A stretch of 64,000 nucleotides of DNA from Bispira polyomma (taxonomy: Eukaryota), in assembly GCA_965649765.1 (NCBI GenBank), contig OZ287757.1, positions 54,250,001 to 54,314,000 of the forward strand. Direction: 5' to 3'. This document shows, in pieces, positions 8,203-62,012 of the stretch (position 1 is the stretch's first letter; each line of letters starts with the position of its first letter). Under the pieces are notes generated by a model, which was given only the letters and a program-made list of their open reading frames with translations, did not search any database and had not been told where the DNA came from. The translations under genes and the position numbers were made by a program.

Positions 8203-8272
8203 ATGGGTCCGATGTACTTCCTGTTGATTGCTGTTGCATTGTGGGGCTCGACTTGTCAGGTGTCCTTTGCAG
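8203..8272 (+). CDS. Protease coding exon 1: signal peptide MGPMYFLLIAVALWGSTCQVSFA
   Basis: Good Kozak context aacaATGG, hydrophobic core ending S-F-A, donor GCA G|gtaaaa. An acceptor tttcag at 8136 implies an upstream non-coding exon. Confidence 0.85.
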
Positions 8273-11200: not shown

Positions 11201-14200
11201 TTTTGCTCCACATAAAAGGGACATCGAGTTAACAGGGTTTTACTTAAAGGGGTTCAATTGTATATGCAGACTGCTTAAAGTAATCGTTGCATGAAATCGG
11301 TCCCATCGTATGGGTCGGTTTCTATAGAGCTGAACATGGTGTCAATATACCACTGTAAAGCTTATGGGGCGGTGACACTGGGTACATTCAGGTTTGTTTA
11401 GTTTTATATTATAGGAAATGTAAGCAAACTAGAAATAAAGTGAAATTTTGGAAAATGTATCCTACAAATTAATGTATGATGTATGAGACGTTTTAACCTG
11501 TAACCTTGTAATCTATATGGCCGGTAATATTTTAAAGAGGCCCTTTCTACTGTACAGGTTAAATAAAGTGGAACCCTGTTAAATAGAACCTGAAGGGACC
11601 ATAAAACAGATATTCTACTTAACAGTAAATTTTAATTATAAATACAGCAGTGGGACTTTAAAATAACTTCTACTTAACAGGTAATTCTGCTTATCAGAGT
11701 TTTACTTAAAGGGGTGTTTGCCTGTATTGCTTTACAATATAAATGATTTTTAAACGGTCGCTGTCCTAACTTAGGAATGGTCTTTTTATAGAGCACATTT
11801 TCATAGGAAAATTTACTGGAGAATTTTATGTGGGTTTTACGTGGAAGTGGTCCTCAAGTTGGAGTGGCCTTTAGGTGGGGAGTGGCCTTTAGGTGGGGAG
11901 TGGCCTTTAGGTGGCAGTGGCCTCTAGGTGGGGAGTGGCCTCTAGGTGGGGAGTGGCCTCTAGGTGGGGAGTGGCCTCTAGGTGGGGAGTGGCCTCTAGG
12001 TGGGGAGTGGCCTCCAGGTGGGGAGTGGCCTCCAGGTGGGGAGTGGCCTCCAGGTGGGGAGTGGCCTCCAGGTGGGGAGTGGCCTCCAGGTGGGGAGTGG
12101 CCTCCAGGTGGGGAGTGGCCTCCAGGTGGGGAGTGGCCTCCAGGTGGGGAGTGGTCTCCTTGAAAGTAGTCGCTAGTACAGGTTTGACTGTAAGTGTATA
12201 TAGTGAGAAAGGCTGGCAGTAAACGTCCCAATGTTATCGACTATATTCTCAGTTAAACTTAAATATCACTACAGAAACACTTGGACTTGAGAGATAACTT
12301 CAAACCTATCTCTTCGAACTCCCTTTATTGGCACCCACCCCCTTTAGTTCCTCCCTGTACACCCTCATATCCTTTGTTGCCACCTTGCCTTTGTTTTCTG
12401 TGGACTTAGTGGTTAATTGGATTTGTTGTGCTATAGGGAATAGCTCGCACCATTAAGGCACATTAAAAATCTAAAATACAATAGAATCTAAAATACAATA
12501 AAATCTTGGAAAACCTACCAGCTATCCCAATACCAATAACCTCACTTTTAGCATCTGGAGTGAAAGGTGTGTGCTAGTCTCGGGAGAAATTATATGCTGT
12601 GTGTAAATGTTTGATATCATCAGACCTAGACTTCACTATAAACTCTAAATCACCTCGCCCCCTAGTTCAGTCTAAGACAGCTGTTGTTAAGCAATGTTAA
12701 CAACCCCCAAAATAAATTCCACCAAGTTCTACCTTGCCTGCTTTCTTTCACCAAGGAGTTGACCCTGGACAGTTAATCAACCGAGCGACTGCAGAGACGA
12801 GAGACGTTCCTTTGGCGGCAGAGACGCAGTACTCGTCCGCCCGTCAGGGGAGGGCAGCAGCAGACAGGAACCAGAACCTCTTCCACATAGAGATGTTGTT
12901 ATTGGTAGACTACTCGGTGTACTCATTGTAAGTACTCGGTGTACTCATTGTAAGTACTCGATGTACTCATTGTAAGTACTCGATGTACTCATTGTAAGTA
13001 CTCTGTGTACTCATTGTAAGTACTCGGTGTACTCGTAAGTAGTCAGTGTACTCGTAACAGGGCTAACACTGATCCCATAACATTACATTTGTTTGGATAA
13101 TAGAAGTTCTCAAGTGTGTCAACATTCTTTTATAGTTTACCTATCATTATAATTATCAAACTTTTTTTAGAACCTATTTTCTATTGTATAAAATTGTAAG
13201 GCCCAAGAGTGGCCGCAGGTGGCAAAGTGGTTAGAAGCACCTGCTTAATTATCATTGGTGTGTTCGAAATCCCATTCATTCCTTCATGTGGGGAAGTTTG
13301 TCGGGTGGTTCTGGTTTACAAGTACTCCAGGTGACAAGTTTGTCAGGTCCATGGTTTACAAGTGATTAAGTACCACGTTTTCTCTGCTATAGGTTAACTT
13401 GAGTTAAGGCAGCTAAATTAAAAAAAATATTCAGAATCCAAAAAAATAATTGATAAAACCTAGTACCAAAAAGTAACTTGTAAATCGTCTTAGTTTTTAA
13501 CTTTTAAAACTCAGCTGGTCAGATGCTTACATGTGCTTAAGCACCGGCCTTACTTTTCTATTGAATTGGGCTGTCGTGATATGGACATGAGCCTGTTATA
13601 AGCAACCTCACAAACATCTCACTAAATCTTAAGGTGCTGAATTAAAAAAATATTCAGAATCGAAAGAAATCATAATTGGTGAAAAACTAGTAACAAACAA
13701 GTACCTTGTAAAAGGATTTTGTTTTTACCTTTCAAAACTCAGCTGGATGAATGAAGTCAACCAAGTTGAAGCAGATGCTAAAGAAGAAATTCTTTATTTC
13801 TACGTCCACATATTCAACGCGGTGAGTGACTTGCTATTTAAATGAATTTGTTAATGGATCGTGTAATATCCATTTATCTGTGCATTAACCACTCGGGTTT
13901 TCCAGAGTCTCACTTTCAGCTCCACTATCAGTGTGCTGGACTATTAATCTCAAGATCAGCAAGAGTTACGGTTCGAATCCAAGCAGAACCAAGTTTCTTT
14001 AGTTGTTTACAATGGTAAAAAGATCGCACAGTTTGACAGGGCGATATGCTTCTGTAATGGCCCACTATTTAACAATAGTTACAAGAATTCTGCAATATTG
14101 TAAAAGAGATTTTTCAGAAAATGATCTATTCCAATTTTGTATTTGGTAATATGTTGTCTTGAAAAAAGGATATATATTGGGATATATAGAGTTCTTAATA

Positions 14201-16461
14201 TATTGTTACTCTTAATGTGTTTACTTCTATGCCATATTTTTTTAGAAGGCACAGCCTGATACTGTTTTCATTTTGTGAAAAGTGCGCCGCCAATTAAGAA
14301 ATAATATGGAAGGCCTTCATGGATTGGTCTCACAATCGACTGGTCAAAATTGAGAGGGTGTCCAATTATTAAACGTTGATGTGGCAAATTTACATACTCG
14401 GGCAAACCCATCAGTTGTGCCTGTCTTTTTTTTTTTGAAAGACTACCCTTGTTTTTTTGTATTTTAGATGTACATGGCCTACAGAAACATTGACCCTGCA
14501 AAAATGACCATTGTCCTGTGGTTAACTGAAATTCACATCATTAACGTAAGTATTTTAGTTTTTAGTCAGTTTGTAAATTTTAGTGGACATATGTGGCTGT
14601 AATACCCGTGTATGATCGGTGCGTTTAACACTTGGGCATCCGGGGTTATCCCTGTAACTCAACTGTTAGGGCATGCAACTATTCATCCTAAGATCCGCAA
14701 GAGCCACGGTTTGAATACCAACAAAAGCAGGTTCTTTATAAGTTTGTGTGAATGAGAGGAGTTGTAGTTTCTGTCCCTTGCAATTGACAGATGAGTAAAA
14801 ATTATTATAATAATAAGAAATTTTAAAAGAAATTGGTATAACTACTTTTTTATTACTTGGGCAATTAAGGTAAAGACACTTTGTATAGATGAAAAGCATG
14901 TTGCTACGACTACATAAATCTATCTTTTTGTTTCAAAGTGACGTACAAGCCCACATTAATAGGGTAAATGTATTAAGCTTGAAGTTGTATCAAAATACTG
15001 TTACATGTCATAACAAGAATTGTATTGTATTAGGGATTTTGTTCATGTCAGGCACCTTAAGCACCACAACAGAATCGGTTAATAATCAAACAAAATATCC
15101 AAATAAAATAGCCAAGGTTGTAGGGAAGCATGTTTGGGGCGGGGGTACAGGTAAGAAACTCGGGAGTAAGCATGTTTAAAGAGATGGGTTTGAAGCCTTT
15201 CTGCTAAAACCAGAAAGTGTTTCAGGTGACCTTAAGCTGAACTGGGAGACATTTCCACAACATAGGGGCAGCAATAAGGCTCTAGATCCAACCCTGTTGT
15301 GCTCCTTAAAGCACATGTATTGTGGCCTAGACAATGTGCTCCTACCGTTACGGCGTCCATAGTCAGTACTGTATGACTGTGTTTTGACAGGAAGCATCCA
15401 AAGAGGTTGCTAAAGCCAGTCCTGCCAACACCACCTCGATTTTTGAAAGGGTTGACGACTACCTGGCAACAGAACAACTTAATTTTACATATACAGATAA
15501 CGTGCAGCTGTGGACCAAGTAAGAGGATTTTTATTTTAATGGTCAGGTGTAAATCTTGTAATAAAAAAGATGGTTATACTGAGTGAAATATATGGCCAAA
15601 TATTCCCACAATCAAATGTATTATTGGATGCCAAGTGGTGCTAGAGTGTGTAATTTGAATATTCCAAAACAGTTCAAGTCATACTCTTTGTCATGTCATT
15701 TTGTCTGATCAGCATGTACATATCATTGGCCTACTGTTAAGCATCCACATAGTCTGTGGGTAGTGTACTTGTTTTTGGCTAGATGGCCATCATTGCCTGC
15801 CTTGGCAGAAATTATAGTAATCTACATGTACCCAATTTCTTCAGGCAGGATTTGTGGACTCAGAATCTAACAACAGACACAGTGTTAAACGTAGACGTAC
15901 TTGGTGTTGCGTATGTATGCGGCTTGTGCTGGGTCAATGTCAGCATCTCACTAAACGAGGACCATGGACACTACTCTTGGGTGACGGGCGCTCACGAACT
16001 CGGACACAAGTAAGTACATGGCTCTTTATACAGGCGCTTCACACCAAAGGGGTTATTTAAAGTAGATATGTTACAGGGAATATGTGTAATCAGGGAATAC
16101 GCGTATACTTTGTTTTGGTCGGGGAATACGTGTACATTGACCGAAACAGTTAAAAGCAACGTCGAACCCAAATTGAAATGAACGTAAACCAAATATCTAC
16201 AAGCTTGGTTATAATCAATGTCACGGGGCCGCGGTGGCCTAGTGGTTAGCAAGCATTGCGCTTCACAATCGCTGGTCTCTCACCTTTGGTTAGTGAGTTC
16301 GAATCCGGTTGATGCCTATGTATGAAAGGTAGTAGTTCCTTACTGTGGACCGCTGGTTTCAGTGCAGAATCTTGATCAACTGTATGCAGCGTTTCCTCCA
16401 GCGTTTCCAACTACCTGTCCCAATATAACCTTAACAGGTACTAGAGTGGACGTTAAAAATA

Positions 16462-16492
<31 letters not shown>

Positions 16493-19400
16493 TCAAGGTC
16501 AAAGCAATCGCTCTGTGGGTATGGTTATCAGTTTACAAAAGTCAGTAATAAAACACTTTACTGGATTGCCACTGGTACTAAGATACAGGAAAATAAAACA
16601 GTGAGAAAAATGGATAATCGTATCCATAAGATATAAGCATTGACATAATCGTGCTATCTTATGGATAGAGGGGGGTGGGGGTGTGTGTATATTGGAAAGA
16701 TGTAGGTAACCATGGTTATTTATGCCATTCCTGTAGATAGGGTAATGTCTGAACTTGCAAGGATTTTAGCTTTCATATTTGGCATCCATATGGTGTCTGT
16801 TTCAGTGACGGTCCATTTTTAATTTGGTGTTAATATACCTAAAAATAAGTGAGAAACAGCAATTTTCTTTTTGGGGATTGTAAGCTTTGATTAAATTGAA
16901 TCACATGATTTTCCGAGCATGCACAGTTGGTCACTCTTGGTTAATCAATACACAAAATGTTGCTAGAGCCTTCCAACGATAGATATTTTCTATGATGTTA
17001 CCGGAAACAGTTACTTCACTTGTCTGGGTTTGCAGTAAAAATACCACGAAAAAAACCATATATTTATTATATGTATCGGGTACACGTTTTCTGTGCCAAT
17101 AATATAAGATATTTTTTATTTTATTCAAATATCAAACATATATACGGCTACTTCTATTTTGGGGTAGCTCACTCTTGACAAAACGAGCCTTTGTAGGCGA
17201 GACGGGCTTGGCTGAAAATCTGCGGATTTTCTGACAAATGACGTCGGTGAAAGTTTTTTTTCTTAGAGATTTTCGGAAACGGCTGCAAAAGATGTCGTCT
17301 TTGAAAATAGAAGATAAAACTAAAACAATGACAATTGGATCCCAAAAATTAAAAAATTTATTACCACAATAATCACATAATTTCGTTTGTTTTAAACTTC
17401 TTATTTACTGATTTTGAAGTATATATATTGTGTACTTCGTTCTAGCTTGCCATAACGCCCGCATACAGTTGGTTATAAGCTTCAATGAATTGATGTCGCG
17501 AAAATATCCTGGTATATGGTGATAGTTTTCTTAATATTTTACTGCATAAAATGGTTCTATATCAATATTTTTGTATCACCAAAAAGCTATTTTATACTTT
17601 TCGACAGTCCAAACAGTTGCCAAATCCAATGAATATTATTTAATTTTTTTTAAGAAATCGTTGTTAAAATCTTAAGTTTTGACATAAATAGGCATTGATC
17701 AAATTATGATTTTTCTGTAAATACCTAAGCTAAAATTTTAAGATTTATATATCATCAAAAAGCAATTTATTCACTTATTTATGGTCCTCTTTACAGAATA
17801 AAATTTCATTGAATATCGACTGAGATAGTGTTCTTTTTATTATGCATACATATTTTACTGTGAATTTTATGTGGCAGTCAAAATTTTATTGTTACAGAAA
17901 TCTGTGTATACTGAACGATCCTTGACCCAGTCAAGCTGAGATCGGTTAGAAACTGATTAAACTTCAAAATATTTAGAAATTAAAACGTTAAAATGACAGT
18001 TTAATACTTCCAAATAAAGTCCGCGTCGTTATGGATGGATTGTATGCTTTAGCAAGACACTTGTTTAATGAAAAACTGAGAGCCGTGAGCGATAATTGAA
18101 GATCGATTTTTACTGATGGTTCGAGATGGTTCACTATTTGTGACTGGTTCACACTTTTTGGACTCGTCGGTAACATGCTGTCGTGGCATCATCATGGTAT
18201 GGCCGCTTTGACAGGGATGGCCAAACTTTTAATTGCCTACATCTCCCTTATTATTGGTTGTAGAGGTTTGGGATGTGAAACCAACCCATAGGAAATCATG
18301 GGCTGGTAATCTTTTGCTGTGGTCAGATTTGACCTTGGAACCCTTATGCAAGGTCAAACAGGTGGGCCACACTTTAAAAGTGCCTATCTTACACTTATTA
18401 TTGGTGACACAGGTTTGCAATTTGAAACCCACTTGTACCATTTTAGGCTTTAGCATGAATGCCCTGTAGGAAATCATAGGCTTCTAGCTTGGGTGCTAGC
18501 TACCGAGGGTGCTTTGTCTTTCTGGTGGATGCAAATATGCATCGATGGGTTAGGTGTAGTTTTCTTTAGGCATAGTAAAAATTTATGGGATAACTTTTAA
18601 TAATAGCTTAATAATTTTGTAATAATGAAAATAATGAAACTGATTTAAACAATATGAAGTTTTATTTGGTTTTGAGATAGATAAAAAATTAAATTTGTTC
18701 TTCTAATTATTGTAAAAATCTTAATTTTACTGAGTATATGGTATATATATAAGTGCCTCCATCTGTTTTTTTGTACCTTCATCTTCTGTAATTATACCTT
18801 TATTTTTGGTGCATGTGCAGGGTTTTTGTATGTGGCCCCCTTATTGTTAGCACTATATTGTACCTCTTTCATATGTACCCCCCTCTATATTTTTGGTACT
18901 TCTTTGTACCTCCAGTCTTGGTAGCCAACACGATGAGAATGAATGCATTAACCCAAACAAGTACATCATGTCATCGAATCAGTCACAAGTAAACGAGGAT
19001 ATCACCAAGACAGCATTCAGCTTCTCTGGTAAAGTAACATTTAGTACTATTGCATTTACGACACATTTATACCAATTTACTCCCGATCATTCGAACTTGG
19101 CTGATCGGCAGAGAATGGGTCATCAATACTGGATAGCATATTATTCACCAGATCATGCCCAGGACACCATACTTTTGGCTTTGTGTATACAGGGCTAACA
19201 CCAGCTAGAACTACCAATAGTGATAGTGACTCATTAGAAGCAATGAAAGCAACGTTAGACAATGTCATTGCATTAATATGGAGTACCAACATTAGCACCA
19301 AGTCCTCTAACAGGGTTGATGTTTCACAAAATATCCTCATTTTAATTTTTGGTACTCTTAAACAAAGGTTTGGTAGTCCAGCCTAAATATATAGTCAATG

Positions 19401-22400
19401 TATTAGTGTGACATGTTGTACATGGTGCAAGCGTGACTCTGAAAGTAATCTTATTCCACTGAATAATTTTGTCGGTCATCATTACTTGAATTGTTGATCA
19501 GTATTAAAATACTAATGTATGTGTCTACCTAAATATAAGGATGCAATGTTAAAAAATTTATCAGTTTCGAATGAGCGAGCAAAAATGAGACCTGTCTTTA
19601 CTTCTTTGTACATAAACATTACATTTGCAGTGTTAGTTGAAGTTAAGATAAAAATTTGCAAATATATTTAAAATTTAATGAAGTAGTCTGTCGGACTACC
19701 TTTTGGAATGGTTTTGGTTGTCCATTTTCATTTTTACTTGACTAAGATATACGTAGACCCCTGTCTAAAGTGTTTAGTCTCGAAAAAGGGACTAACAGTA
19801 AACCACGAGAACAAGGTTATATCACCAAGAGAATCATCTGGCCAGAGAATCAGGTGGCTAGTTTTAAGAGATAGGTCTTACATATTACTTCTGTATAGCG
19901 TGAGATCAGATTGGGAGCGAACATTGACTAGTAACTTCTGCCATTCCGAGCAGTAGCTATAAAAATATCTTATCCCACTTGTTTGGTTGGGAAGGGGGGG
20001 GGGGTGGGGGGAGGGGGGGATTGTTCCGATAGTCTAGTAGTTACTGGCCTCTGAACAATTGTATCCACCGAGGAGGTGGATGCTTTGGTTTAGCGTTGGC
20101 TACGCCGCCGCCGAGAAATTTTCAGTTAACATTCTCAGCGAAAAACTAGACCAGCTAGCTCAGCCAAATTTGCATGATATCTTCATTGGGATGTAAGCAC
20201 CTCTGCGACTGAAATTAGCCTTTTTCTGAAAAACAAGATGGCCGCCATGGGCATTTCTTTGAAAATTATCTATCTTTTTCTACTGGCTGGTTCTCGTAAC
20301 TAGAAGGTTGAATCTCTTCATAGGTGATATGTATAACAGATATATATGTCCTCTACAAGCATGCAGACATTTGACTTGGAAGCTCTTCATTCAAGGTCAT
20401 CCACGGAGTGCCAAAGTACCCCACATAGCAGACTTTAAAAGTGCCTATGTCTCTTATTATTGGTCCTAGAGATTTGGCATGTGAAGCCAACCTATAGGAA
20501 ATCATGGGTTGGGAGTCTTCCGATGCGGTCAGGTTTGACCTTGGGGGCCCCTCCAAGGTCAAACGAGGATAACGAAACCTAGAAGTGCTTAGAACTCGCT
20601 TATTATTGGTCCTAGAGGATTGCAATGTAAAACCAACTCATAGGTAATCATGGGCTAGGACTCTTCTGATGTGGTCAGAAAATCATGGTCGTAGAGGTTT
20701 GGGATGTGAAACCAACCTACAGGAAATCTTAGGCTGCTAATCTTTTGGTCACATTTAACCTTGCATCCCTTGTGCCAGGTCAAACGGGTACGCCAAACTT
20801 TGAAGTGCCTGTCAGACTTATTATTAGTCCCACAGGTTTGCAATGTCAAACCCACTTGTGCCATTTAAGGCTTTAGCATAAGTGCCCTATAGGAAATCAT
20901 AGGCTTCTAGCTGGGGTGCTAGCTAGAGTGCTTGCTACTGCGGGTGCTTTGTCTTTTTGGTGGATACAAACATGCATCGGTTCTCCGATGCGCTAGGTCT
21001 AGTTTAGGTTTGAATCTCATTCATTCATTTATATTAGACAGTTTGAGACCGATTAAATCCAGTTTTAGGCTCAACATTTTGTTTATACCATAACTATTGT
21101 ATTTTTTTTTTCAGATTGTTCGATAAACTATTTCAAAAGTTGCTTACTTGGCAAAGACAATACAGAGTAAGGAATGTCTTTCACTTGCTACTTGTCAGCG
21201 ATCTTGGCATTAGCAATCTTGGGCACCAGTCTAACCAAGTTGTCTGTACTAACAAACCCAGACACCAGTCTAACCAAGTTGACCCTACTACCAAACCCAG
21301 ACACCAGTCTAACCAAGTTGTCCCTACTAACAAACCCAGACACCAGTCTAACCAAGTTGTCTGTACTAACAAACCCAGACACCAGTCTAACCAAGTTGTC
21401 TGTACTAACAAACCCAGACACCAGTCTAACCAAGTTGTCCCTACTAACAAACCCAGACACCAGTCTAACAAAGTTGTCCCTACTAACAAACCCAGACACC
21501 AGTCTAACTTGTCTGTACTAACAAACCCAGACAGCAGTCCAAGTTGTCTCCACTGACAAAATCAGACACCAGTCTAACTTAGTCGTCCACACTTGTTAAT
21601 AAACTTGACACCAGTCTAACCAAGTACTCCCCTCTTTCGAATGCTGATAGATTGAGTTGTCTTCAACAGTATGTTATTTCATTCAGATGCAGCTGTTTGT
21701 AAGATTGTAAGGATATATAGGTAGTCAAGTGCACTTTCCATCTTCAAACGCCTCCATTGGCTACCAATTAAAAGAATTTTATTTAAAATTCCATCTGTAA
21801 ACTTTAAAAGCACTGCATGGATTGATTGCTGATTACCTTTTGCTGGCTTAATATCAGGGGAGATAATCTAGAGTATTCATGTAAAACAAAGGACAATTGA
21901 AAACCAGAACTCGTCTGTGTGACAGATCCTTTGCCATTGCGGCAAAAAAAATTGTCGAGCCAGTGGGCAGAAAACAGTACAGAAAACTGTTATTGCTTTG
22001 AAACCTTTTAAAATAACTATTTGATAATTTATACCAAGGGACAGTTAATTTTGCATTGCTTTTAATCATGTTTTATAGAAAATGCACTTTATATAAATCT
22101 GTCTACAGTGCTACAAATACAAAATAACTAGTGATGTCATTTGTGCTGTCCTATGGTCTAGTGGTTAGAGAAGGAGTTTGGTGATCTAGAAGTCCTAGGT
22201 TCGCCTCAACACTCAATGGCGCTTGGTTTATTGGTAGGATAACATCCTTGGGGAAAATGAGAACATATCATTGCCTACTGATGATGACCAAGGACATCTG
22301 ATTGGTTGATTAATTTGGTTGCTGCGCTTTGGAAAGATGCCCTCGCATTAATAAAGCGCATTAAAAATATCATTTTGCTGACCTCATATCAGTGCAGAAA

Positions 22401-49400: not shown

Positions 49401-52400
49401 TCGTTCCAAATGCACTTAACTCATGGGCAGCCATAATGAGCGCCGTGCCATGGCTTGCTTGAAGATGACTATTTATCAGTGTCCCCAAGGATCTTTAATC
49501 TGCCACAGGAGATCAATGCAGAGGACCGCCATTTTAAGTGGTCATCCAAGCCACTAGGAAAACTTGTGTTCACATCTTGTTATGTCACTAAATGAAACCA
49601 GCGGCCTGTACCGGTATTAGAACCAGGGACCTTCTGATCATCAAACCAATGCCCTCGCCACTAGGCCACGGAGATCACCGACCACGGGGAGGACATGTCA
49701 CATCTATATATCCATCTGTCCATCTTCAGTCACTTACTCTTTCCCTGTGATAGTGGTTGGTCTGTTGTTTGTTGTCTGTTTATTTGATTATATATCCATC
49801 TCTCCATTTTTATGCCTTCAGCCACCTACTCTGGCCACCATGAGTGTATCATTCACATTTTAATCTGTAATAGGTAGTGTGACTATCTCCCCATCTGTGT
49901 CTATTTTGTCCATCTATCTCCCCATCTGTGTCTATTTTGTCCGTCTATCTCCCCATCTGTGTCTATTTTGTCTGTCTATCTCCCCATCTGTGTCTATTTG
50001 TATTCTTTCAGTCACCTACTCTGGCCTCCCCGAGTGTATCGATCCCTCCTCCCCCTGTGATGGTAACTATGACTGTTACTACAGCGATGATGAAGACGTC
50101 TCCTGGTGTCTATCTGAAGGTTACGAGCCTCACTGCAGCCAAGAGGGCACTATCGCCTGCCCTTACGACGGTAAGTCCAGGACTTTTATTATTACACCAC
50201 AACCTCCATTGTCAAAACTGCTGCTGTTCAATTTTTAATGAATTCAGTTTTATGAACTCGATCATTGCAACGGTAACTCAAGTGGACCGTGGTGGCCTAG
50301 TGGTGTTAGCACTTGCTTCACAATCACTGGCCACTTACCGAATGTGGGTTGGAATCCCATAGTTTGTTCTTTTATTAGTGGGATAGTTTGTCAAGAACTT
50401 GCCACAGGCCGGTGGTTTACAGTGGTTTCGCCTAAGCTGTTAAAAGCGACATCAAATCCAAGTAAATTCAAATATATTAAAAATTGTAAATTAGTGACGT
50501 TTTCTTCCAGTTAAAATTTTAACTTGTACAGTTAGTATTCAATTTGATGAACACAATTTCACTCTTCCGAATTTTTATTTTTTTCCTGTTTCTTCCAAAT
50601 TGATACTTTTTTCCTTTTTTGCTTTTTTAAAGTGAACTTTCTAATACTATCCAAAACACAATCCCTCCTCCACCCCCAAGATGCTCGTTTATAATAGGAC
50701 GATTCTACTGTACAACTATAACACCTTATTTCACACTTGTGCGGTGTCGTGTGCCGTGTGGGATCTTTTCTCGATAGACTCCATTGGCAACCTATCAAGT
50801 ACCGCATTGTTTCGAAGACCAATGTTTAAGTCAGTCAGTCCCCATATCTTGCCTCTTTGCCTGTCTTACTGCAGCCTTACCAAGGGGGAAAACAGAATCT
50901 CATTCTCTGATACCAGAACCATTAAATGGATTGGAGTCTATGCCTTCTCTGTCACAGCACCTGAACCCTATGGAATAATTTACTAGCCAATATATAGGAT
51001 CCCAGGAAACCCCTCTTGTTTCAAGAGCAATTTTAAGACCCATTTCTTTACCCTCGCTTACCCTCGATAGACATTTTTTTCCTCCATGTCGCCCCCCCTC
51101 CTCCCATCACGAATTTGCAATCTGAAGACTTCAATTTTAACAACTTTGTCAATGATGTGGCTCTTTTGGCATCAATAAGAAGCGTTACAAAAATCTATTG
51201 TGTACTTTATATATCAGATTATTCTGTCTGCGAAATAATGACCAAAATATTGTGTTGCGTGACTATATACTAGCTAAAACCTTCCGACCAAAAACAATTA
51301 CTAATATCTATGATGTCCGCCCAATAATATGCAGTAAAATATGTCAATTCATGAACTTAATTCATTATTATTTGGAATATAACACAAGACGCCTTCGGCA
51401 TTTTCCGTTTACTTCTTGTTTAAATATTGATTGATTGAGCAATGAAAATAAAAATGTAGATATATACAGACACTGATAACCAACAGTTAAAAAAATCACG
51501 GTTTTCAAAAAAGTAAGACCATGCCGGAATATATTTTAAATATGTTTTACTGCATTAAATGGCCCTATGTATGCTTCAAGTCGATGGAACTTTACTATTA
51601 ATTCAATATACATACTACCAGTACCACCTACAGGAGGTTATATTTTGATTTTTGTCCGTTGGTTTATATTTGTGACCGCTTCAGCGGCTACTGAGCCCTT
51701 GTTCGGTCTATATGTGCAGAATACAGCTGGGAAGTGGACTGTATTAATGCCACATATCCCTGTGATGGAATACAAGACTGTTACCTGTACAGCGATGAGA
51801 ACGTCACCTGGTGTAATGAGCAGGAAATTATACCAAAGTGTTTCTACAACGACACCATATTTTGTATACAACCTGGTGAGTGGGTAATATATGTGTACTT
51901 GTTGTATATTGATCTAGTGGCTAGGGTGTAAGTCTGACGATGAGTTGGTCCGGGGTTCTATTCCCAAAGTAATATCTGTGTAATATCAGCGCATTAAACA
52001 CGTGTTTATGAAAACCATGGTGATTCAGGTGGCGTTGTAGCATATCGTTTAAAAAAAAAAATTATTATTAGTAATATGTTTGATTAAAAAAAAGTTGTAA
52101 CTATCTACCAACTAACTATCCAGAATCTTAAACATAGGTCACTGTAATTAGCATGCTAACCCTGTATTATCCTAGATTTACCGAATAGAAGTCAGGCTTT
52201 TACTACAGTCTAGTGCCAAATTGGTATTGAAATGTACACCTTTTTTGAAGGTATTGTTGCATTTTCTATGTAAAAAACCGGTCGCCGTGTTGGCCTAGTG
52301 GTTAGAAACGCCTGCATTTACAATGACTGCCCTCTCACCAATGATGTGCGACATCAATCCCGTTCGTCCCTTAATGTGGGAAAGGTTTGTCAGGTCCTTG

Positions 52401-55400
52401 CCGTAGGTTGGTGGTTTACACAGTGGCTTTAGCTCTGGTTTCTTCCACCATTGAATCTGTCTGTCGCAATATGACCTACGCTTGTTGAAAACGACGTAAA
52501 ATGCAATTTTTTATAAAATTGCAACAGAATAAATTTGCTTTGTTTCCTGATCCTGTTACCTTTTTGTATTTTTTTGCAAGTGTATTTCTGGAACATTTGT
52601 TACAATCTATTGCAATACATATATTGTGAATGCAACTGAAATATCAGTGAAACCACAGTGGGCAAATATGACTGTTAGGCTTTTTTAGTTGCTATATATT
52701 TAATGCTATCATTTTCTATTTAAACAATACTAGCATTTCCTAATAAAAAAAACACAAGAGAAATCCAACAAAACCAGCTAAATTGATTCTCCGCCTTACT
52801 AATGAAAGAAGTAACTGATTACGCCATTACAGACAGATATCTGATGCAAATAAACAGGAAAAAAAATTAAAACAAAGAGTTGTCGTTGAAAATAAGACAA
52901 TTGGGCATACGGTGTCAAATACACTGATGCTGATCTGGCCACTATAAACGCCAGTGTGACGGCGTTATGAATGTGTCCATTTTATCCCTGTCACTCATTT
53001 CCATGCTTGTTATTAAATAGATGTTTTACCACAGATGCACCCCATCAAGTATTAATCTGACGCCCCTCAGTTTGGCCGGGTCGATTGCTTCCCACCAATC
53101 CACGCATGCCTTTACATAATATTGCTAAGACGGTGGCGCCCTTTTCAGAATCTAAACAAAATCAGGCCTTGGCAGGTAAAAGCCGAATAAAGAATCCCAT
53201 GACGAGACTAGCCCCCTACTATCTGACATTTCTAAGCCATTTTCTGTATTTTGGGGGATGTTCGACAGATGAGACTGTGAATTGTGTGCTGCTCGACTGG
53301 GTGTGTGAAGAAAAGGAGAATTGTCCACAGGGAGAAGATTGTACAGATCTGAGCTGCCGAGAAGGACTAACTGAATGCCCTAATCTAGGTAAGTTATGTG
53401 TGTGTGTTGTATAATAATATAATTATACTTTCCATTTTTAACATGCACAAGTCCCCTAACAAAACAGAAGCAACAATCAATCAATGGACCTAATTTTCCC
53501 TATAATTTTGTCCATATTGAACGCATTTCATTTCAATAAATAATTGATTTTTATATGTACAATTGATTTTATCTTAAGGCGTTTGTGTTATGTCATTTGT
53601 CCACCCATTCATTATTCTGAAATGAGCCATTTCTTATCAAAACGTTGTGTCTGGGGTTAGGTTGTTAAGGTATATACAACTCCTACAAAATAAAAAGGTT
53701 TTGTTTTTTATAAACAATAAATATGGGAGTATTTTAAATTTAAGATTAAAACTAAAATGATGAAAATTTAAAAAAAATTACCTTATATGTACACATGGTT
53801 TAGTTGGTTTTAATTTCTTCAACCCATCCAACAAAACATGGCCATGTCAGTGTGGTCTCTGATGGATCTTAATAAAATTGTCACAATACCAAAGATTCTA
53901 CCCTAAAATTAAATTAAAATGTGTTCGATGAGATGCCAGACCTGTGAGTTTTTCGTCTGTAAGTTAATATTTCATTAAGTCACTCTGACTTTAGCCAACA
54001 AAACAGGCTTGTGACAGCATTGATTGTATGTTCTATGGGATATTAGACCTTCAAGTTTTTTATCTCTGAAGAGGGGGCATTTGTAAAGTAATGTTTTATG
54101 AAGTAAGTTGCCTTTGGAAGTTTTCGTGGGCAAAAATATGAGAAGGTTATTCCATGTTTACTACTAGTGCTGTGATAGCTTTTAAAAAACGATGTCTGGA
54201 GCCGATTCATATAAATGCGCAGTTTCGGCAATTTCTGAAATTGTCCCTCTGGTAAAGTAAATGTTTCGATGAGATTTTAAAGCAAAAATTATATGAACAA
54301 GAAGTTATTGAAATAGTTTTTAGGGTAATTTGGTTGTATACTACAAAATTATAATGGCTAGCTATAATTTGAATGATTTTAGTGTTTGCTGCAATGCTTT
54401 CCAGACATAGGCAAAAAGCGATGTGTGACCACTTAGCAGTCACGGGCTTTTTTGTTAGTGACTCCACAGCCATCTCTAGCCGATTACCGAAAACTTTTTC
54501 GTTCAGTTCCCGGCGATGGTTCTCTCATGGGGGTCGAATCAGTTAACCATTCGTGTGTAGTGCTATTGTAGATAGATCCTAATGGTCACCTGTCCCCTTC
54601 TGTTTTTGCAGACAATATAATGTACTGTGTGAATGAGAGTTACATTTGTGATGGTATCTGTGACTGTCTCAACTGCACAGAGGAGAACATGACTTGGTGT
54701 ATTGAGGAGAATTACCCATTGGAGTGTTACTTTAGCGATGAGATAACCTGTCCATTGAGCAGTAAGTATTGTATTCAGATTTATACTTGGCACATATATC
54801 TACCTTCCTCTGGTATTCAGAGTGGTAATTAAATCTTTCCTGACTGCAACAGTCAACTGCCTCATTTACTGTGATTCCCCTAACTGAAAAGCTCTAGAGG
54901 CTTGAGGGTGACGCCATTTATCAAGGATCTTCAGCCCTGCCACTGTCGATAGGGACCCAGTGATAGGGGACCACCATTTTAAGTGGTCATTCGAGCCACT
55001 CGGCAGACGTGTACACATCTTGCCCAAAAATGTTATCCTACCAATGAAACTAGCGGCCAGTACCGTGAAATAGAACCCAGGACCTTCTGATTATCAGACT
55101 AACTCCCTTACCACTAGGCCACGGGGGACCACTATGTAACCTTTTTGAATGGAATCTAATCCAATCTAATCTTTTATCATGCTTATCTGTGTGCCAGCAG
55201 ATTCTAAGGCGCACAAGACAGAAAATCATTTTGACAATCTTGTATAGCCTTTGGACGAACAGGGGTTGTGACCATGTAGGTGCCGGAAAAAAGGTCAGGA
55301 GGCAAAGGTGGAAAAGCCTTGCTAAATAGTTATGTCTTCAGCTTTATCCTAATACAGGCAAGTGAGGAATCAGTACGAATCCAATGAATCTACTCCTGAC

Positions 55401-58400
55401 CGGGGGAGAGCATATAAATCGAATCTCAGCCGAGGTGGGACTATATACTGTTCAATCTTTACATTTTATATCGGTTTCTCTCTGTATATTGTTCACAGAT
55501 GACGTCACTGGGTATGAGCTGTACTTCCAATGTATTCCACCCCAGTGGGCTTGCGATGGCTATGCCGACTGCCCCGATGAAACTGATGAAGACTTTGACT
55601 GGTGCATGTCACTCCCCTGTGACGATTACTTCGTCCCCTGTCCAGGTAAGATTGTTGACAAACATAATACATCTGTGTGTTAACAATTTTAAAATGTTTG
55701 GCTACGCAATGCCTGTAAGCATGTCTTTCGTATGGAATGTTTTAAATCTGCAAAAAACATGCAGTATAATGCTCGGTAGGTTGTTTACGCTCTCCCATCA
55801 GTCTCCCTTGACCCTATTCTGTTTTTAAACTTAAACATCTTGGCAATTTCCCGACCGATTTTAATGCAACAAAAAGCACAGTAATCGCAATAAAGGTAAG
55901 CTTTCTCATCTTTCTCAGCGAATTGTTTTGCACAGGTATCGAGACTTATTTTAACAAATAATAGTGATACAGGAACTATTTTCAAATGTTACAAATGCTA
56001 ACTTTTGCTGCTTTTTAATGGGTTTGTTTATTAAATAGAATGACGGTACTTCACTGTCTAAACAGAATCCGAAACACTAATCCATGAAAATAGGACACTT
56101 AGCGATACGGACACACTTTTAGGTGCTTCAGTAATCTAATCTAAATACCTCTTTTGGGATGGGTGTTCAATTTTCCTTGAGAGAACTCCAATCATCATTA
56201 TTAGCATCCTAATTATAAGGCCAAAGTCGTAATAAAAGAGGGATATAGCCGTAGTAGTTTACAAATTAGCATTCAAGTCCAGAGGAAAGGAAGGCAACAT
56301 TAAAATGGCCTGGTGTGATGTGACTTGGGATGCTTTCTACAAAAGGGTCAATGCTCGGTGATTAATGGGTGGTGGGGGGTGAAGCCCTAAAATAGGGAGT
56401 CTCCAAGACTTGACCATTTGCGAAAAACTAGTCTAACCCCTTTAAGTAGAACTCCATTCATCTTTTATGTGGGTTTTTGCATGATTATGCCAATGCTTAT
56501 TGGCATAATCGTGCTTTCCCGGGGAAAGAGGGGGACAAATAGGGGTAAACCCTTGGTTACACATGGCAACTATATGTCGACAGGGTCATCTCAGAACTCG
56601 CAAGGATTACCGCTTTCATATTTGACGTACATATGGAATCTGTTTCAGTGACGGCCCATTTTTTAATTTGAAGTCAATATTGCTAGAAATAAGTCAGAGA
56701 TCTCCATTTTCTGTTTAGGGATTGTGAGCTTCTATTGAAGGGCCTATCACCACCCATTTCCGGTTTCTCGGTTTCTAGAACGATGTCATCAGCTGGTTGA
56801 TTCATCGATAGTTTTTGTGAATGGTAGTAAAAAAACGTAGTAAGGTCACATGATCTTCCGCTCATGGGCAGTGATGCGATTAATACATCTTTGTAAAGAA
56901 ATTGTTGTAAAAACCTTAAAAGTTTTGAGATCAATAGGCATTGATCAAATTATGATTTCTCTGTAATTACTTAAACTAAAATTTTATGATTTATTTATCA
57001 TGAAACAGCAATTAATACACTTTCTGACCCTTTTTACAGAATAAAATTTTATTTAATATTCACCGAGACACAAGTCTGTATATTGTACATACATATTTTA
57101 CTGTAAATTCTATTTGGCAGTCATTTTTTTTTTAAGAAATCTGCGTATACCGAACGATCAATCTCCCAGTCAATGAAATATGAGCTGAGATCTGTTAGAA
57201 ACTGTGATTAAACTTCAAAATATTTCTGATGGATGGATTGTATGTTCTAATTTGCATCTGTTACACGGCTGTAGGCAATTCTAAACGGTCGGTAATTCTG
57301 AACGAAAATACAAATAAAATCCACCTACTGTAATTTTGAAAGCAACCATTTAACACCAGTAAATGTACATGCTATTATATTCTTTTCGACCAAATTTTCC
57401 ACTTTCTATCAATATTTTCAATATTATCAACAAATATAAAACACTTATTGGTTTAAGTCCTATTTACCAGCTTGTGTCGACAAACAAAATGACGTCATCA
57501 ACATCTGTTCAGAATTTCTGTCTTTGCTATTTGACAGTTTTTAATACATTATTTGACACTTCTCTATTGAAAAACAGGGATATACAAGTTTTGAAACAGG
57601 TACCTAAATAAAATAAGTATTCTTATTTATTTAGTGCCTTTTTAATGCATTTTGTCCCGAATTTTGCAAATTTAACGAAAAATCGTTCAGAAATGCTGAT
57701 GACCGTGTAACAAAAATCTCTATAACCACCACTCGTCTCGAAAACGTAAATTGCTTATATCTATCGTCAAACGTCCTGTTAGTGTACGCTTCCTGTTAAC
57801 GGACACCAGTTCTGCTAGCAAATCTCTTATTTTGGGATTTAAAATTAAAATGAGGATGAAAACATAACAGCATTCTCTAATCTTTTATTTTGTATTATCG
57901 CCCATTAAAGACCGACTCTGTAGCGACTGTATCCTTGTCAATTTCGACGGCTAACTAGTGACTGGGTCACTATTTTCAGACTACGGCTTTGTTGTGGCAT
58001 TATCATGATATGGCCGCCAGGCCATTCTCCTCTTGTCTGACTGTTGTTGCAAAAATGCCTTTTTAGGGTAAATGTTTAAAATCGTAATTTAGACTTTGAG
58101 ACCACTTGGGTATTTGTCTTTCTAACATCGGTAAAACGGCTTTTATTAATCAGTCTTTATTTATGATGGCTGAATTACAGAGTCGACAAGTGAAAACCTT
58201 TATTTTTGTCCAGTTTGTAAAAACATAGAGTGTAGGATTACATGATACACGGATGTTTATACAGTAAAACTTCTATCATCCGAACTGATTCTGATGAAGT
58301 AATTGCCACGCCCCCTAAAAATGTTTTTTCCCTATTGTTTTGTACAGAAAACCATGTTCTATTTTATAAACCTTTCTATTTATCCAAACAAAATCTTTCT

Positions 58401-61400
58401 CTCCCAACATGTTCGGGTAGTAGAGGTACTGGTGTATTCATTGTATCTACTGATCTTCATTGGGAGGTAAGCTTCTCTGCGACTGAAATTAGCCTCATTA
58501 TGAAAAGTAAGATGGCCACCATCGGCATTTCTTTGAAAATTATCCACTTTTTTCTACTGGCTGGTTCTCGTAGCTAGAAGGTTAAATCTCTTTATAGGTG
58601 ATATGTATAACAGATATATATGTCCTCTACAAGCATGCAGACATTTGACCTTTAAGCTCTTCATTGTCATCTGCGGAGTGCCAAAGTACCCTACATAGCG
58701 GACTGTAAAAGTACTTATAATTCGCTTATTATTGGTCCTCGAGGTTTGGCATTTGAAGCCTACCTATAGTAAATCATGGGCTAGGAATCTTCGGATGTGG
58801 TCAAGTTTGACCATGGGCCCCTCATTCAAGGTCAAACAAGGTATCCAAACTTAAAAATGGTTATAACTTGCTTATTATTGGTCCTAGAGGTTTGCATTTT
58901 GAAACCAACTTATAGGTAATCATAGGCTGGGAATCTTCTGATGTGGTCGGGTTTCACCTTGCGCCCTTCCATCAAGGGCAGACAAGGGTTGTTAAACTTA
59001 AAGTGCTTATAGCTCGCTTATTATTGGTCCTACAGTTTTGACATGTGAAAGCAACCTATAAGAAATTATGGGCGGAGAGTTTTCTGATATGGTCAGGTTT
59101 GACCTTGGGGTCCCTCCTTCAGGGTCAAATGACAATAGCCAAACTTAAAAGTGCTTATAACTCTTATTATTGGTCCGACAGGTTTCCAATGTGAAACCAA
59201 CTTGCAGTTAATCATGGACTGAGAATCTTCTGATGTGGTCTGATTTGACCTTGGGCCCCTCCTTCAAGGTTAGACGAGGGTAGCCAGAGCTTGGGTGCTT
59301 CCTACCTAGGATATCTTTCTGGTGGATACAAATATGCATCAGTTCTCCGATGCGCTAGGTTTAGTTCTATATAAAATAAGACTTCCATATACTTTTAGGT
59401 GGCATACAGATCGAGTATCAAAGGCGACAGAAAGGGGACAGAAATCGCCCCCAAGGGCTCACCGAGGAGAGCAGGAAGTCGGTCAGGGGTGAAGGTCGCA
59501 GTAATAGAAACTATGGTTTGAAAGTGAAAGAAAGGGATGACCTTAACACATGGGAAGGCAAGGTCGCAAGGAGAGGGGATAACCGACCGACCAACCTGCC
59601 TGCTCGCGAGGACTTGCACGCTAGAGTGGATAAAGTCAGACAGGAAGTGGAGAACAATAACCAGAAAAAACGAGACAGAACAAGGAGCAAAAACACTCGA
59701 GGCAATACTATTGAGACGAGAGAGGAAAGGCAAAAGGGATCGGCGAAGGATGATATGATGCAAAAGGCAGGAGAAGAAAAGCCTAGGGAATGGGCAAAGA
59801 ATGATATGAAGAAGAAAGCAGAACAAAGACAAAGGGAATCTGCAAAGGATGATATGAAGAAGGCAAGGGAACAAAGGCAAAGGGTATCGGCAAAGAATGA
59901 TATGATGAAGAAGGCAGCAGAAAAGCAAAGGGGATTAACAAAAGATGATATGATGAAGAAGGCAATGGAACAAAGGCAAAGGGGATCGGCGAAGGATGAT
60001 ATGATGAAAAAGGCAGGAGAACAAAGGCAAAGGGGATCGACAAAGGGTGATATTGAGACAAGGAAACACCAGGAACAAAAGAGCGGCAGTGCATGGGTTC
60101 AGAGGTCTCTGAGCAAGGTAAGAGAGTAGAGGAATGTGGGTTATAGCCCCTGAATCTGACCTTTTGACCTTCGTGTGATAATTATTTAGGTCACCACGCT
60201 GAAAGGGTTAAGAGTGCTCGAAGTGTAAGAAATACGTTTCTATAGTCTGTAAAAAAATATGAACAGTTTACAGAGATTTACAAGATTTCTGTGTGTGGGG
60301 TGGTGTGTGTGTGTGTGTGCAGCCTATTGTGTGTATATAATTATGCTGGGGAATAAACCCAGACAGGTCACGCGCGAAAGATTAGATAATATTACAACTG
60401 TTCAATTAATTCTCAATTTTGTATGTCAACAAGGATAAATACCGCCTACTTTTATGCATTTAACAGTGCAGAATGAAAGGCGAATGCCACAAAAAATAGG
60501 AAATGGACTCAGAGTTTATCTTTAACAGGGCTCCACTGTGGCCTGTAATCTCGAATTTTAGTCGAAACTACTTCATATAATGTCATTTAGTTTGTCTTGC
60601 GTTGATCGTGAGAAAAATTAACTTCCCAAAGGATTACAATACAGAGGCGTCTTTATGTCAACTCAGTGTACCAGTGAATCATATGCAGGCCCTCAGAGAA
60701 AAATCAATAACAATAATGGATTGTGTTCAAATACATTGCTGGTACCTAATTCACAAAATTAATGTTAAACCATTGAAAAACCATAGCTTACTCAAATTGA
60801 CAAAATATTGGTTTAAAATAGGTTTATCAAATGACTTATAATCGTTTGTAATGTTTGCTGGCTTTTTTTACGATTTTTGATGACTCATCTGTGTGAATAA
60901 ACCAGTCAACAACTATCTTTACCATTACATAGTAAGGATCATTGGTTTCCGAGTCCCACTCCTCTTCCAGCATTTAAAGCCAAATGAGTGTATGGTAGTT
61001 GTACACAGAACTCGGACAGTTTTAACTTGTAAGAGTATGTTGTGTAATATGCATTCTGTCATGCCGGCATCGTAATAACCCATAACAATCCACGGCCTGT
61101 ATCCACAAAATGTCAGTCTTAAGATTTTCGTCTTTGATTTTGGCTAAAAAAAGGTTAAGATTTTGGTTATGAATCTCTGTTTAGTGTTAACTTTGCTCTT
61201 AACCCACTAATTGTGTATATACATACTCTATATACACATAGTCCCCCCAAGAAAACGATTATAAGCAATAATTTTTTTACCAAAAATATTAACTAAATAC
61301 ATAATATAGATCGTCTCTGTGGCCTAGTGGTTAGAGCATCCGACTTTGTATCTCAGGGTCCAGGTTCTATAGTCGCTGCTAGCCTGGAGATGGCTCCCTT

Positions 61401-62012: not shown

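What the first reader, a model, noticed from the sequence alone, without database searches (positions are those of the whole stretch)
8203..62012. Unusual secreted metalloprotease architecture: M12B + ADAM-CR + ShKT + mucin + 13 LDLa-like + basic tail
Seen: a complete phase-consistent 32-exon model (~1548 aa) with intact HELGHNLGSQHD and Met-turn, no TSP1 WxxW motif and no transmembrane helix. Known: ADAMTS proteins carry TSP1/spacer domains and ADAMs a TM segment; LDLa arrays are typical of LDL receptors and mosaic serine proteases rather than reprolysins. M12B+ShKT is seen in lophotrochozoans, but I do not recall a characterised one with a long LDLa array. Inference: a lineage-specific, exon-shuffled capture-and-cleave enzyme for mucus, shell/matrix, egg coat, digestion or immunity.
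Basis: partly seen in the sequence, partly recalled or inferred. Interest (0 to 1): 0.8.

Follow-up and report, generated by a model that had tools for sequence, protein, structure and literature searches.

The report
Worm matrix protease with LDL-receptor array
A segmented worm has a conserved gene for a secreted, MIG-17-type matrix-cutting enzyme that carries a long string of LDL-receptor binding modules; no annotated protein or paper I found has this combination, and the string starts and ends half a module out of step, which suggests an unusual fold.

Summary
32 GT-AG exons give 1549 aa with no internal stop, an intact HELGHNLGSQHD motif, no TSP1 motif and no membrane helix. The host is probably an annelid.

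No RNA run was available, but one gene is well supported. A second animal has counterparts of 30 of 32 exons in the same order, including all 13 LDLa exons and a basic tail, with synonymous sites near saturation. Five more loci in this genome place protease-side exons before LDLa exons.

The core (prodomain, M12B, ADAMTS_CR_2, PLAC/ShKT-like) is the known MIG-17/Sona type, common in molluscs. The closest annotated kin are Intoshia linei proteins. None of 83 full-length relatives carries LDLa modules; kin carry ShKT, EGF or Ly6-like tails instead.

The LDLa exons read C3-C6 then C1-C2, leaving half-modules at both ends in both species, whereas two paralogues end canonically. The array may fold as permuted units or close like a Pot II bracelet; this is untested. 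The likeliest role is a tethered matrix or mucus protease with a Ca2+-dependent binding arm.

The joined protein was not searched. Two other first-reader notes cover parts of this stretch; I found none on other DNA.

The parts
8203..8272 (+). Exon 1: start codon and signal peptide
   Evidence: ATG plus hydrophobic stretch; counterpart in second species, 53% identity
9352..12927 (+). Exons 2-5 (9352-9563, 10537-10623, 10904-11075, 12756-12927): cysteine-free prodomain ending at RQGR (aa 210-213), then start of the catalytic domain
   Evidence: orthologue 50-68% identical, with RFRR at the same place; paralogue has RSKR
13743..21166 (+). Exons 6-11 (13743-13821, 14468-14545, 15391-15518, 15845-16009, 18916-19028, 21115-21166): M12B catalytic domain with zinc motif and Met-turn
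   Evidence: Pfam Reprolysin; weak PDB sequence matches to snake venom metalloproteinases and ADAMTS1/4/5; motif intact in the orthologue
23266..33022 (+). Exons 12-15 (23266-23422, 31081-31197, 31993-32056, 32969-33022): subfamily-specific PxxCx5C insert and ADAMTS_CR_2 (disintegrin-like) domain
   Evidence: Pfam continuity across exons 12 and 13; the motif pattern matched only four Intoshia proteins and P0018 among 83 full-length kin
35137..35259 (+). Exon 16: PLAC/ShKT-like module with five Cys; the sixth is probably the Cys of DAPPC in exon 17
   Evidence: ShK E 0.003; the same module in Intoshia kin scores weakly as PLAC
36114..36275 (+). Exon 17: DAPPC plus Thr/Ala-rich mucin-like stalk
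   Evidence: Orthologue has DEPPC plus a Thr/Ser-rich stalk; paralogues have DPPC/DPLC, a linker and a full LDLa module in one exon
36759..55645 (+). Exons 18-30: thirteen phase-1/1 LDLa-type exons, each C3-C4-C5-C6-C1'-C2'; acidic (pI 4.05); half-modules at both ends
   Evidence: one-to-one orthologous exons; no hidden half-module exon in either species
59399..60117 (+). Exon 31: basic tail (pI 10.4 with exon 32), with 16-17-residue Lys/Arg/Met repeats
   Evidence: Stop-free in one frame only, 0 of 20000 shuffles; repeat units of 48 or 51 nt; shorter homologous exon at the same place in the orthologue; unique in this genome
61989..62012 (+). Exon 32: seven codons and stop (least supported exon)
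   Evidence: Strong acceptor and matching phase; no orthologous counterpart found
23721..29296 (+). DIRS-type retroelement inside intron 12 (not part of the protein)
   Evidence: RT and RNase H pieces; inverted terminal repeats 23730-23894 and 29094-29260, internal complementary region 28964-29069

Best explanation
One gene encodes a secreted MIG-17/Sona-type zinc metalloprotease of an annelid subfamily that swaps C-terminal modules; this member carries an LDLa array. Shown from sequence: signal peptide, prodomain, complete zinc site, cysteine-rich and PLAC/ShKT-like domains, Thr-rich stalk, 13 LDLa-type exons (10 with all four Ca2+-cage acidic residues) and a basic tail. Inferred mechanism: it is secreted as a zymogen and matured at the conserved RxxR at the end of the prodomain. 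The basic tail holds it on polyanionic matrix or mucus. The Ca2+-loaded LDLa arm, spaced from the enzyme by the glycosylated stalk, acts as a multivalent exosite that selects or localises substrates, as the TSP1/spacer region does in true ADAMTS enzymes. Most likely it remodels the animal's own extracellular matrix, cuticle or mucus.
For: Intact frame and motifs. Orthologue with 30 of 32 exons in order: protein identity 52-62% by region, pN 0.26-0.30 against pS 0.66-0.91; tail 39%, pN 0.47, pS 0.70. Same-strand, same-order paralogues. In three paralogues a single exon joins the DP(P/L)C end of the core to a full LDLa module. Closest full-length kin at exons 9, 12 and 16 are Intoshia proteins, and the core of one (P0030) is nearest the MIG-17 cluster in the Atlas (features 0.94, TM 0.71). 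MIG-17 is SS-Pro-MP-DI-PLAC and acts on basement membranes (PMC4856095, PMC11232982). The C3-C6 part of the exon-30 model overlays solved LDLa modules at about 1 A over 21-26 residues (E-values above 0.1).
Against: There is no RNA, expression, proteomic or activity evidence. Substrate and tissue are inferred from distant relatives only. No module has the central Asp of DxDxD, which tightens lysine binding about 20-fold in LRP repeats (PMC3304490), so LRP-style ligand capture is not assured. The basic tail is not in the paralogues searched and differs threefold in length between the two species.
Confidence: 0.55

Rival explanations
1. Same single protein, but an outward-facing enzyme of gut, proboscis or mucus glands used in feeding or defence. 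The LDLa arm would bind dietary or foreign proteins or lipoproteins.
For: M12B enzymes are abundant in the Eulalia proboscis secretion (PMC10885894). Leech saliva contains M12B proteases and, separately, secreted four-repeat LDLa proteins (PMC7191736). A MIG-17-like protein is in limpet pedal mucus (PMC7333891). The family is expanded, with a cluster on C6.
Against: Exon number and order in the array are unchanged between two species with near-saturated synonymous sites, which fits a fixed endogenous partner better than fast-evolving secretions. No expression data either way.
Confidence: 0.25
2. The LDLa array mainly regulates or assembles the enzyme: the basic tail folds back onto the acidic array as a built-in RAP-like ligand, or the two terminal half-modules link molecules head to tail into oligomers.
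For: An acidic array (pI 4.05) is followed directly by a Lys/Arg-rich tail (pI 10.4) in both species. The half-modules are conserved, and exon 30 is the best-conserved LDLa exon (78%). Paired positive charges dominate LDLa ligand binding (PMC3304490).
Against: The central DxDxD Asp is absent. The tail repeats are not conserved in the orthologue. No paralogue has a detectable tail homologue.
Confidence: 0.13
3. Two neighbouring transcription units, a MIG-17-like protease and a separate LDLa-array protein, joined only in the model.
For: No RNA junction evidence. LDLa arrays of the same exon class occur at C6:40.37-40.39 Mb and C2:7.41 Mb with no catalytic exon detected nearby (those regions were not fetched).
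Against: Exon 17 ends in a phase-1 donor 483 bp before a phase-1 acceptor, in both species. No signal-peptide exon is evident for a second gene. Single exons bridge the core and LDLa in three paralogues. The order is conserved at six loci.
Confidence: 0.04

Closest known systems
[quoted passage not shown]
   Same: Signal peptide, prodomain, M12B, disintegrin-like/ADAMTS_CR_2 and a small six-Cys PLAC-like module; secreted; no TM. The core of the Intoshia kin P0030 is nearest the MIG-17 cluster.
   Different: Adds a PxxCx5C insert, a mucin stalk, a 13-exon LDLa array and a basic tail (1549 aa against about 510 for the MIG-17 cluster). The PLAC CC pair is replaced by a ShKT-like CxxSC. Orthology to MIG-17 was not tested by tree.
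Intoshia linei M12B/ShKT proteins (OAF70166.1, OAF67595.1, OAF71358.1, A3Q56_02769, A3Q56_00710)
   Same: Closest annotated kin at exons 9, 12 and 16; share the PxxCx5C insert, the CR domain, the PLAC-like module and a Thr-rich stalk.
   Different: Tails are ShKT repeats or only the stalk; no LDLa. All are uncharacterised predictions.
Molluscan and nemertean TSP-less 'ADAMTS-like' M12B proteins (Mytilus, Crassostrea, Patella, Haliotis, Liolophura, Lineus)
   Same: M12B + ADAMTS_CR_2 + PLAC-like module, often with long low-complexity tails; lineage expansions.
   Different: None of 70 hits carries PF00057 or matches the array profile; they lack the PxxCx5C insert.
LDL-receptor family ligand-binding clusters and LDLa-bearing mosaic serine proteases
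   Same: Tandem acidic six-Cys Ca2+-cage modules; aromatic residue before C4 in 12 of 13; 4- to 8-residue C6-C1 links. LDLa-plus-protease mosaics such as nudel and corin are from my own knowledge.
   Different: Secreted, attached to an M12B protease, no beta-propeller or TM. C5-C6 spacing is mostly 10, C2-C3 spacing across junctions is 8-14, the central DxDxD Asp is absent, and the ends are half-modules.
Potato type II (Pot II) proteinase-inhibitor precursors
   Same: Precedent for sequence repeats out of register with structural repeats, where terminal halves form one domain and close a bracelet, or where repeats fold as circularly permuted units (PMC2259423).
   Different: Unrelated fold and function; a structural analogy only.

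Membership tests
Metzincin M12B (reprolysin) | HExxHxxGxxH(D) zinc motif | tested here: met
   HELGHNLGSQHD at aa 383; intact in the orthologue
Metzincin M12B (reprolysin) | Met-turn downstream of the zinc motif | tested here: met
   YIMSS in exon 10; YHIMTP in the orthologue; judged by position, not by structure
Metzincin M12B (reprolysin) | Reprolysin profile match | tested here: met
   Exon 9 hits Reprolysin_5/3 at E 4-6e-4, below cut-off because only one exon was given; full-length kin pass the cut-offs
Metzincin M12B (reprolysin) | Zinc-dependent proteolysis | not testable with these tools
   Needs an enzyme assay
ADAMTS proper | Central TSP1 repeat and spacer domain | tested here: not met
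   No WxxW in the model; no TSP1 or spacer hit on any exon scanned
ADAMTS proper | Disintegrin-like ADAMTS_CR_2 domain after the protease | tested here: met
   Exons 12 and 13
ADAM | Transmembrane helix, true disintegrin and EGF domains | tested here: not met
   No hydrophobic 19-mer after the catalytic domain; no PF00200 hit
MIG-17/Sona-type TSP-less reprolysin | SS-Pro-MP-DI-PLAC order without TSP1 or TM | tested here: met
   Same order in exons 1-17; definition from PMC4856095 and PMC4989167
MIG-17/Sona-type TSP-less reprolysin | Canonical PLAC domain (CC-x-x-C) | tested here: inconclusive
   Exon 16 has CSRSC and scores as ShK below cut-off; homologous modules in Intoshia have CC and score as PLAC at E 0.018-0.7
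MIG-17/Sona-type TSP-less reprolysin | Phylogenetic orthology to MIG-17 | not tested
   No MIG-17 sequence was returned by the tools and the joined protein was not used; only the Atlas neighbour result for P0030
LDL-receptor class A module | Six Cys in order C1-C6 within one module | tested here: inconclusive
   Met across junctions for 12 modules; not met at the two ends, and no hidden exon was found
LDL-receptor class A module | Ca2+-cage acidic residues (C-D-G-x-x-D-C ... D-E) | tested here: met
   Complete in 10 of 13 exons, EE variant in exon 29, degenerate in exons 24 and 28; local overlay with solved modules
LDL-receptor class A module | High-affinity lysine site with central Asp of DxDxD | tested here: not met
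   The central residue is F, A, I, L, Y, N or similar in all 13 exons (rule from PMC3304490)
ShK toxin domain | Six-Cys ShKT spacing ending C-x3-C-x2-C | tested here: not met
   Five Cys in exon 16 and the sixth 12 residues on; 18.3 bits against a cut-off of 20.9

The most novel reading that the evidence does not exclude
The 13-exon array does not fold as an ordinary LDLa bead chain. Either each exon folds as a circularly permuted LDLa module (C3-C6 completed by its own C1'-C2'), or the C-terminal C1-C2 half completes the N-terminal C3-C6 half and closes 13 modules into a disulfide-clasped ring (or links molecules head to tail), as in Pot II precursors. A protease would then carry a Ca2+-binding hoop or permuted arm, an arrangement I found no report of for LDLa modules.
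Probability: 0.4. Interest if true: 0.78.

Novelty: new variant of a known kind. Interest (0 to 1): 0.56.

Why it matters
It shows that the MIG-17/Sona protease core serves as a platform, in annelids and their kin, onto which different recognition tails were fitted: LDLa arrays here, and ShKT, EGF or Ly6-like modules in relatives. That parallels the TSP1/spacer region of vertebrate ADAMTS enzymes and gives a natural set for asking how ancillary domains set reprolysin targeting. The conserved out-of-register array is a small, cheap test case for circular permutation or ring closure in the LDLa fold, one of the best-studied binding modules, where disulfides are reported to stay within a module (PMC4500599). 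The family's closeness to Intoshia proteins is also a possible shared character for the annelid link of orthonectids, though that was not tested by tree.

Tried and rejected
RNA support: the one run search gave three runs, and their contigs cross introns with no exon-exon joints, so they are DNA. Missing exons as the cause of the half-modules: a profile scan and an exhaustive AG-GT scan of introns 17 and 30 in both species found no exon with LDLa C1-C2 or C3-C6 character; rejected. Alternative exon 11 at 20139-20192: wrong phase and lies in a repeat; 21115-21166 fits and has an orthologue. Tail as a chance ORF: rejected, although substitutions among its repeats are not biased to third codon positions. 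Atlas and Pfam gave nothing for the tail. Terminal exons of paralogues after the last LDLa module were not identified. AlphaFold test of permutation: exon 30 gave pLDDT 85 with strands at C3 and before C2'; a paralogue exon gave 77 with a weak end (62) and no such strand. The control is of the longer exon class, no coordinates were returned, and repeat alignments cannot separate within-exon from between-exon contacts, so this shows feasibility only. Structure aligners are order-dependent and covered only C3-C6. Five paper searches aimed at this architecture or family found no description of it. The joined 1549-aa protein was not searched or folded; it was assembled in scripts only to check frame, motifs, composition, hydropathy and Cys spacing.

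Full report
Observation. The result is 32 exons on the + strand from 8203 to 62012, all introns GT-AG, 4650 nt, 1549 residues and a stop. The zinc motif HELGHNLGSQHD forms across the intron at 16009/18916. There is no WxxW and no hydrophobic 19-mer after the catalytic domain. Pfam, run exon by exon, gives reprolysin on exon 9, ADAMTS_CR_2 continuing from exon 12 into exon 13 across the 7.7-kb intron, a sub-threshold ShK on exon 16, and LDLa on 10 of the 13 cysteine exons. The window has no N. All searches used single exons or natural proteins by reference; the joined protein was not searched or folded.

Host. The window is G000:C10:54.25-54.31 Mb of a 1.035-Gb assembly. The genome has three matches over the cut-off to the annelid erythrocruorin linker family and none to the molluscan haemocyanin beta-sandwich (which is weak as absence evidence). 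The closest annotated kin are from the orthonectid Intoshia, which I recall being placed with annelids. An annelid host is likely but not proven.

One gene or two. No RNA was available: the three runs are DNA. Three independent lines support a single gene.

First, paralogues. Catalytic or exon-12-like exons precede LDLa exons on the same strand at C11:51.9, C6:71.7, C6:71.83, C6:70.3 and C10:3.6 Mb; three more loci show only core exons. The two regions I could fetch hold the series from prodomain to LDLa array, with 5 modules on C11 and 12 on C6 by my reading.

Second, in three paralogues the exon after the PLAC/ShKT-like exon begins with DP(P/L)C, continues through a Thr/Pro linker and holds a complete LDLa module in one reading frame. 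It is the counterpart of exon 17 here.

Third, an orthologue in a second animal (ENA ERZ22147071, ctg29889l, plus ctg30934l, probably the other haplotype at about 96% DNA identity) has counterparts of exons 1-14 and 16-31 in order. Twelve of its 13 LDLa exons score best, or tied best, against the window exon at the same position. Protein identity is 52-62% by region while synonymous sites are near saturation (pS 0.66-0.91, pN 0.26-0.30; the alignments were chosen by protein similarity, so pN is biased low). A shorter basic tail exon follows exon 30 there too (39% identity). Exon 15 (17 residues) and exon 32 (7 residues) were not found.

The core. A profile of exon 12 from three paralogues, run against 1.84 billion representatives, gave 27 hits. 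Most are exon-sized fragments from animal DNA in ENA and Logan assemblies. The full-length true hits are three Intoshia linei proteins and one Logan gene; two long hits were unrelated. Two more Intoshia members came from word searches. All have M12B, ADAMTS_CR_2 and a PLAC-like six-Cys module, and most share the PxxCx5C insert of exon 12. The core of one of them is nearest the MIG-17 cluster of the ESM Atlas by features (0.94) and structure (TM 0.71). MIG-17 is signal-pro-protease-disintegrin-PLAC (PMC4856095), and Sona is described as most similar to it (PMC4989167). Seventy mollusc and nemertean proteins share the TSP-less core.

What is new. None of 83 full-length relatives has LDLa by precomputed Pfam, by motif or by a profile of the 13 exons, and paper searches found no such architecture. 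The word searches have limited reach, so this is absence within what was searched. Relatives attach other tails after the stalk: ShKT repeats in Intoshia, two ShKT and an EGF array in SRR23372228, and a Ly6-like Cys domain with a hydrophobic end in ERZ25069863 (read by eye, Pfam blank). The LDLa version is so far seen in two animals that also share a satellite repeat at about 79% identity, so it may be limited to one annelid group.

The register problem. Each of exons 18-30 encodes C3-C4-C5-C6 of one LDLa module and C1-C2 of the next. Read canonically, that gives 12 junction-spanning modules, with C3-C6 left over at the start and C1-C2 at the end. No hidden exon supplies the missing halves in either species. 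The orthologue has the same ends, and exon 30 is its best-conserved LDLa exon (78%). The C11 and C6:71.7 paralogues start at C1 and end at C6, and C6:71.7 uses the same phase-1/1 exon class internally, so the canonical register is the family's ancestral state. For the window gene there are three options: vestigial ends, per-exon circular permutation, or closure of the two halves into a ring or chain, for which Pot II inhibitor precursors are the precedent (PMC2259423). AlphaFold folds exon 30 alone at pLDDT 85 with short strands at C3 and before C2', while an imperfectly matched paralogue control is weaker at its end. This suggests permutation is feasible and proves nothing more.

Mechanism. 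Shown: secretion signal, cysteine-free prodomain with a conserved RxxR end, complete zinc site, Ca2+-cage residues in 10 of 13 exons, an acidic array and a basic tail. Inferred: maturation at the RxxR, anchoring by the tail to polyanionic matrix or mucus, and substrate selection or localisation by the array held out on a glycosylated stalk. By analogy with MIG-17, which is secreted as a proform and acts on basement membranes (PMC11232982), remodelling of the animal's own matrix is the best guess (0.55). A glandular feeding or defence enzyme is the main rival (0.25). All 13 exons lack the central Asp of DxDxD, which strengthens lysine binding about 20-fold in LRP (PMC3304490), so the ligand may not be a classic LRP-type basic patch and the tail-masks-array idea is weakened.

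Verdict. A real, conserved gene and family; a new variant of MIG-17/Sona-type reprolysins; not an ADAMTS proper or an ADAM. Interest 0.56, rising to about 0.78 if the array proves permuted or ring-closed.

Noticed in passing
window 23721-29296: DIRS-type retroelement in intron 12, same strand as the gene: inverted terminal repeats (92% alike), internal complementary region, and RT and RNase H in separate open stretches.
   Followed up: partly
window 18215-18437, 20435-20857, 58706-59286; L048:11000-12220; L051:1-980: A 146-bp tandem repeat family lies in three introns and is shared at about 79% identity with the second species, at non-orthologous places.
   Followed up: partly
G000:C6:40.37-40.39 Mb and C2:7.41-7.42 Mb: Long arrays of the same LDLa exon class with no catalytic exon detected nearby; either diverged family members or stand-alone LDLa proteins.
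   Followed up: no
G000:C6:71706410-71706250 (L041): The second LDLa module of a paralogue has lost C4 and C6 together, the pair bonded in LDLa modules.
   Followed up: partly
window 37456-37608 (exon 19): A seventh cysteine, absent in the orthologue, makes the mature protein's cysteine count odd (105); a possible free thiol.
   Followed up: no
window 54612-54761 (exon 29): An extra cysteine pair in the Ca2+-cage region is kept in the orthologue and in an exon of the C6:40.39 array.
   Followed up: no
L055:4435-5991 (ENA ERZ25069863): A relative with the same protease core appears to end in a Ly6/three-finger-like domain and a hydrophobic, GPI-signal-like end; read by eye, Pfam blank.
   Followed up: partly
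L047 (Logan SRR23372228): A compact-genome animal has the same core followed by a mucin stalk, two ShKT domains and about eight EGF repeats.
   Followed up: partly
G000:C5:65372883, C2:48045835, C4:8741161: Three intron-poor Reprolysin_5 matches in open frames of 734-1338 codons, unlike this many-exon family.
   Followed up: no
window 12911-13053: A 22-bp tandem repeat copies the exon 5 splice donor several times into the intron.
   Followed up: no
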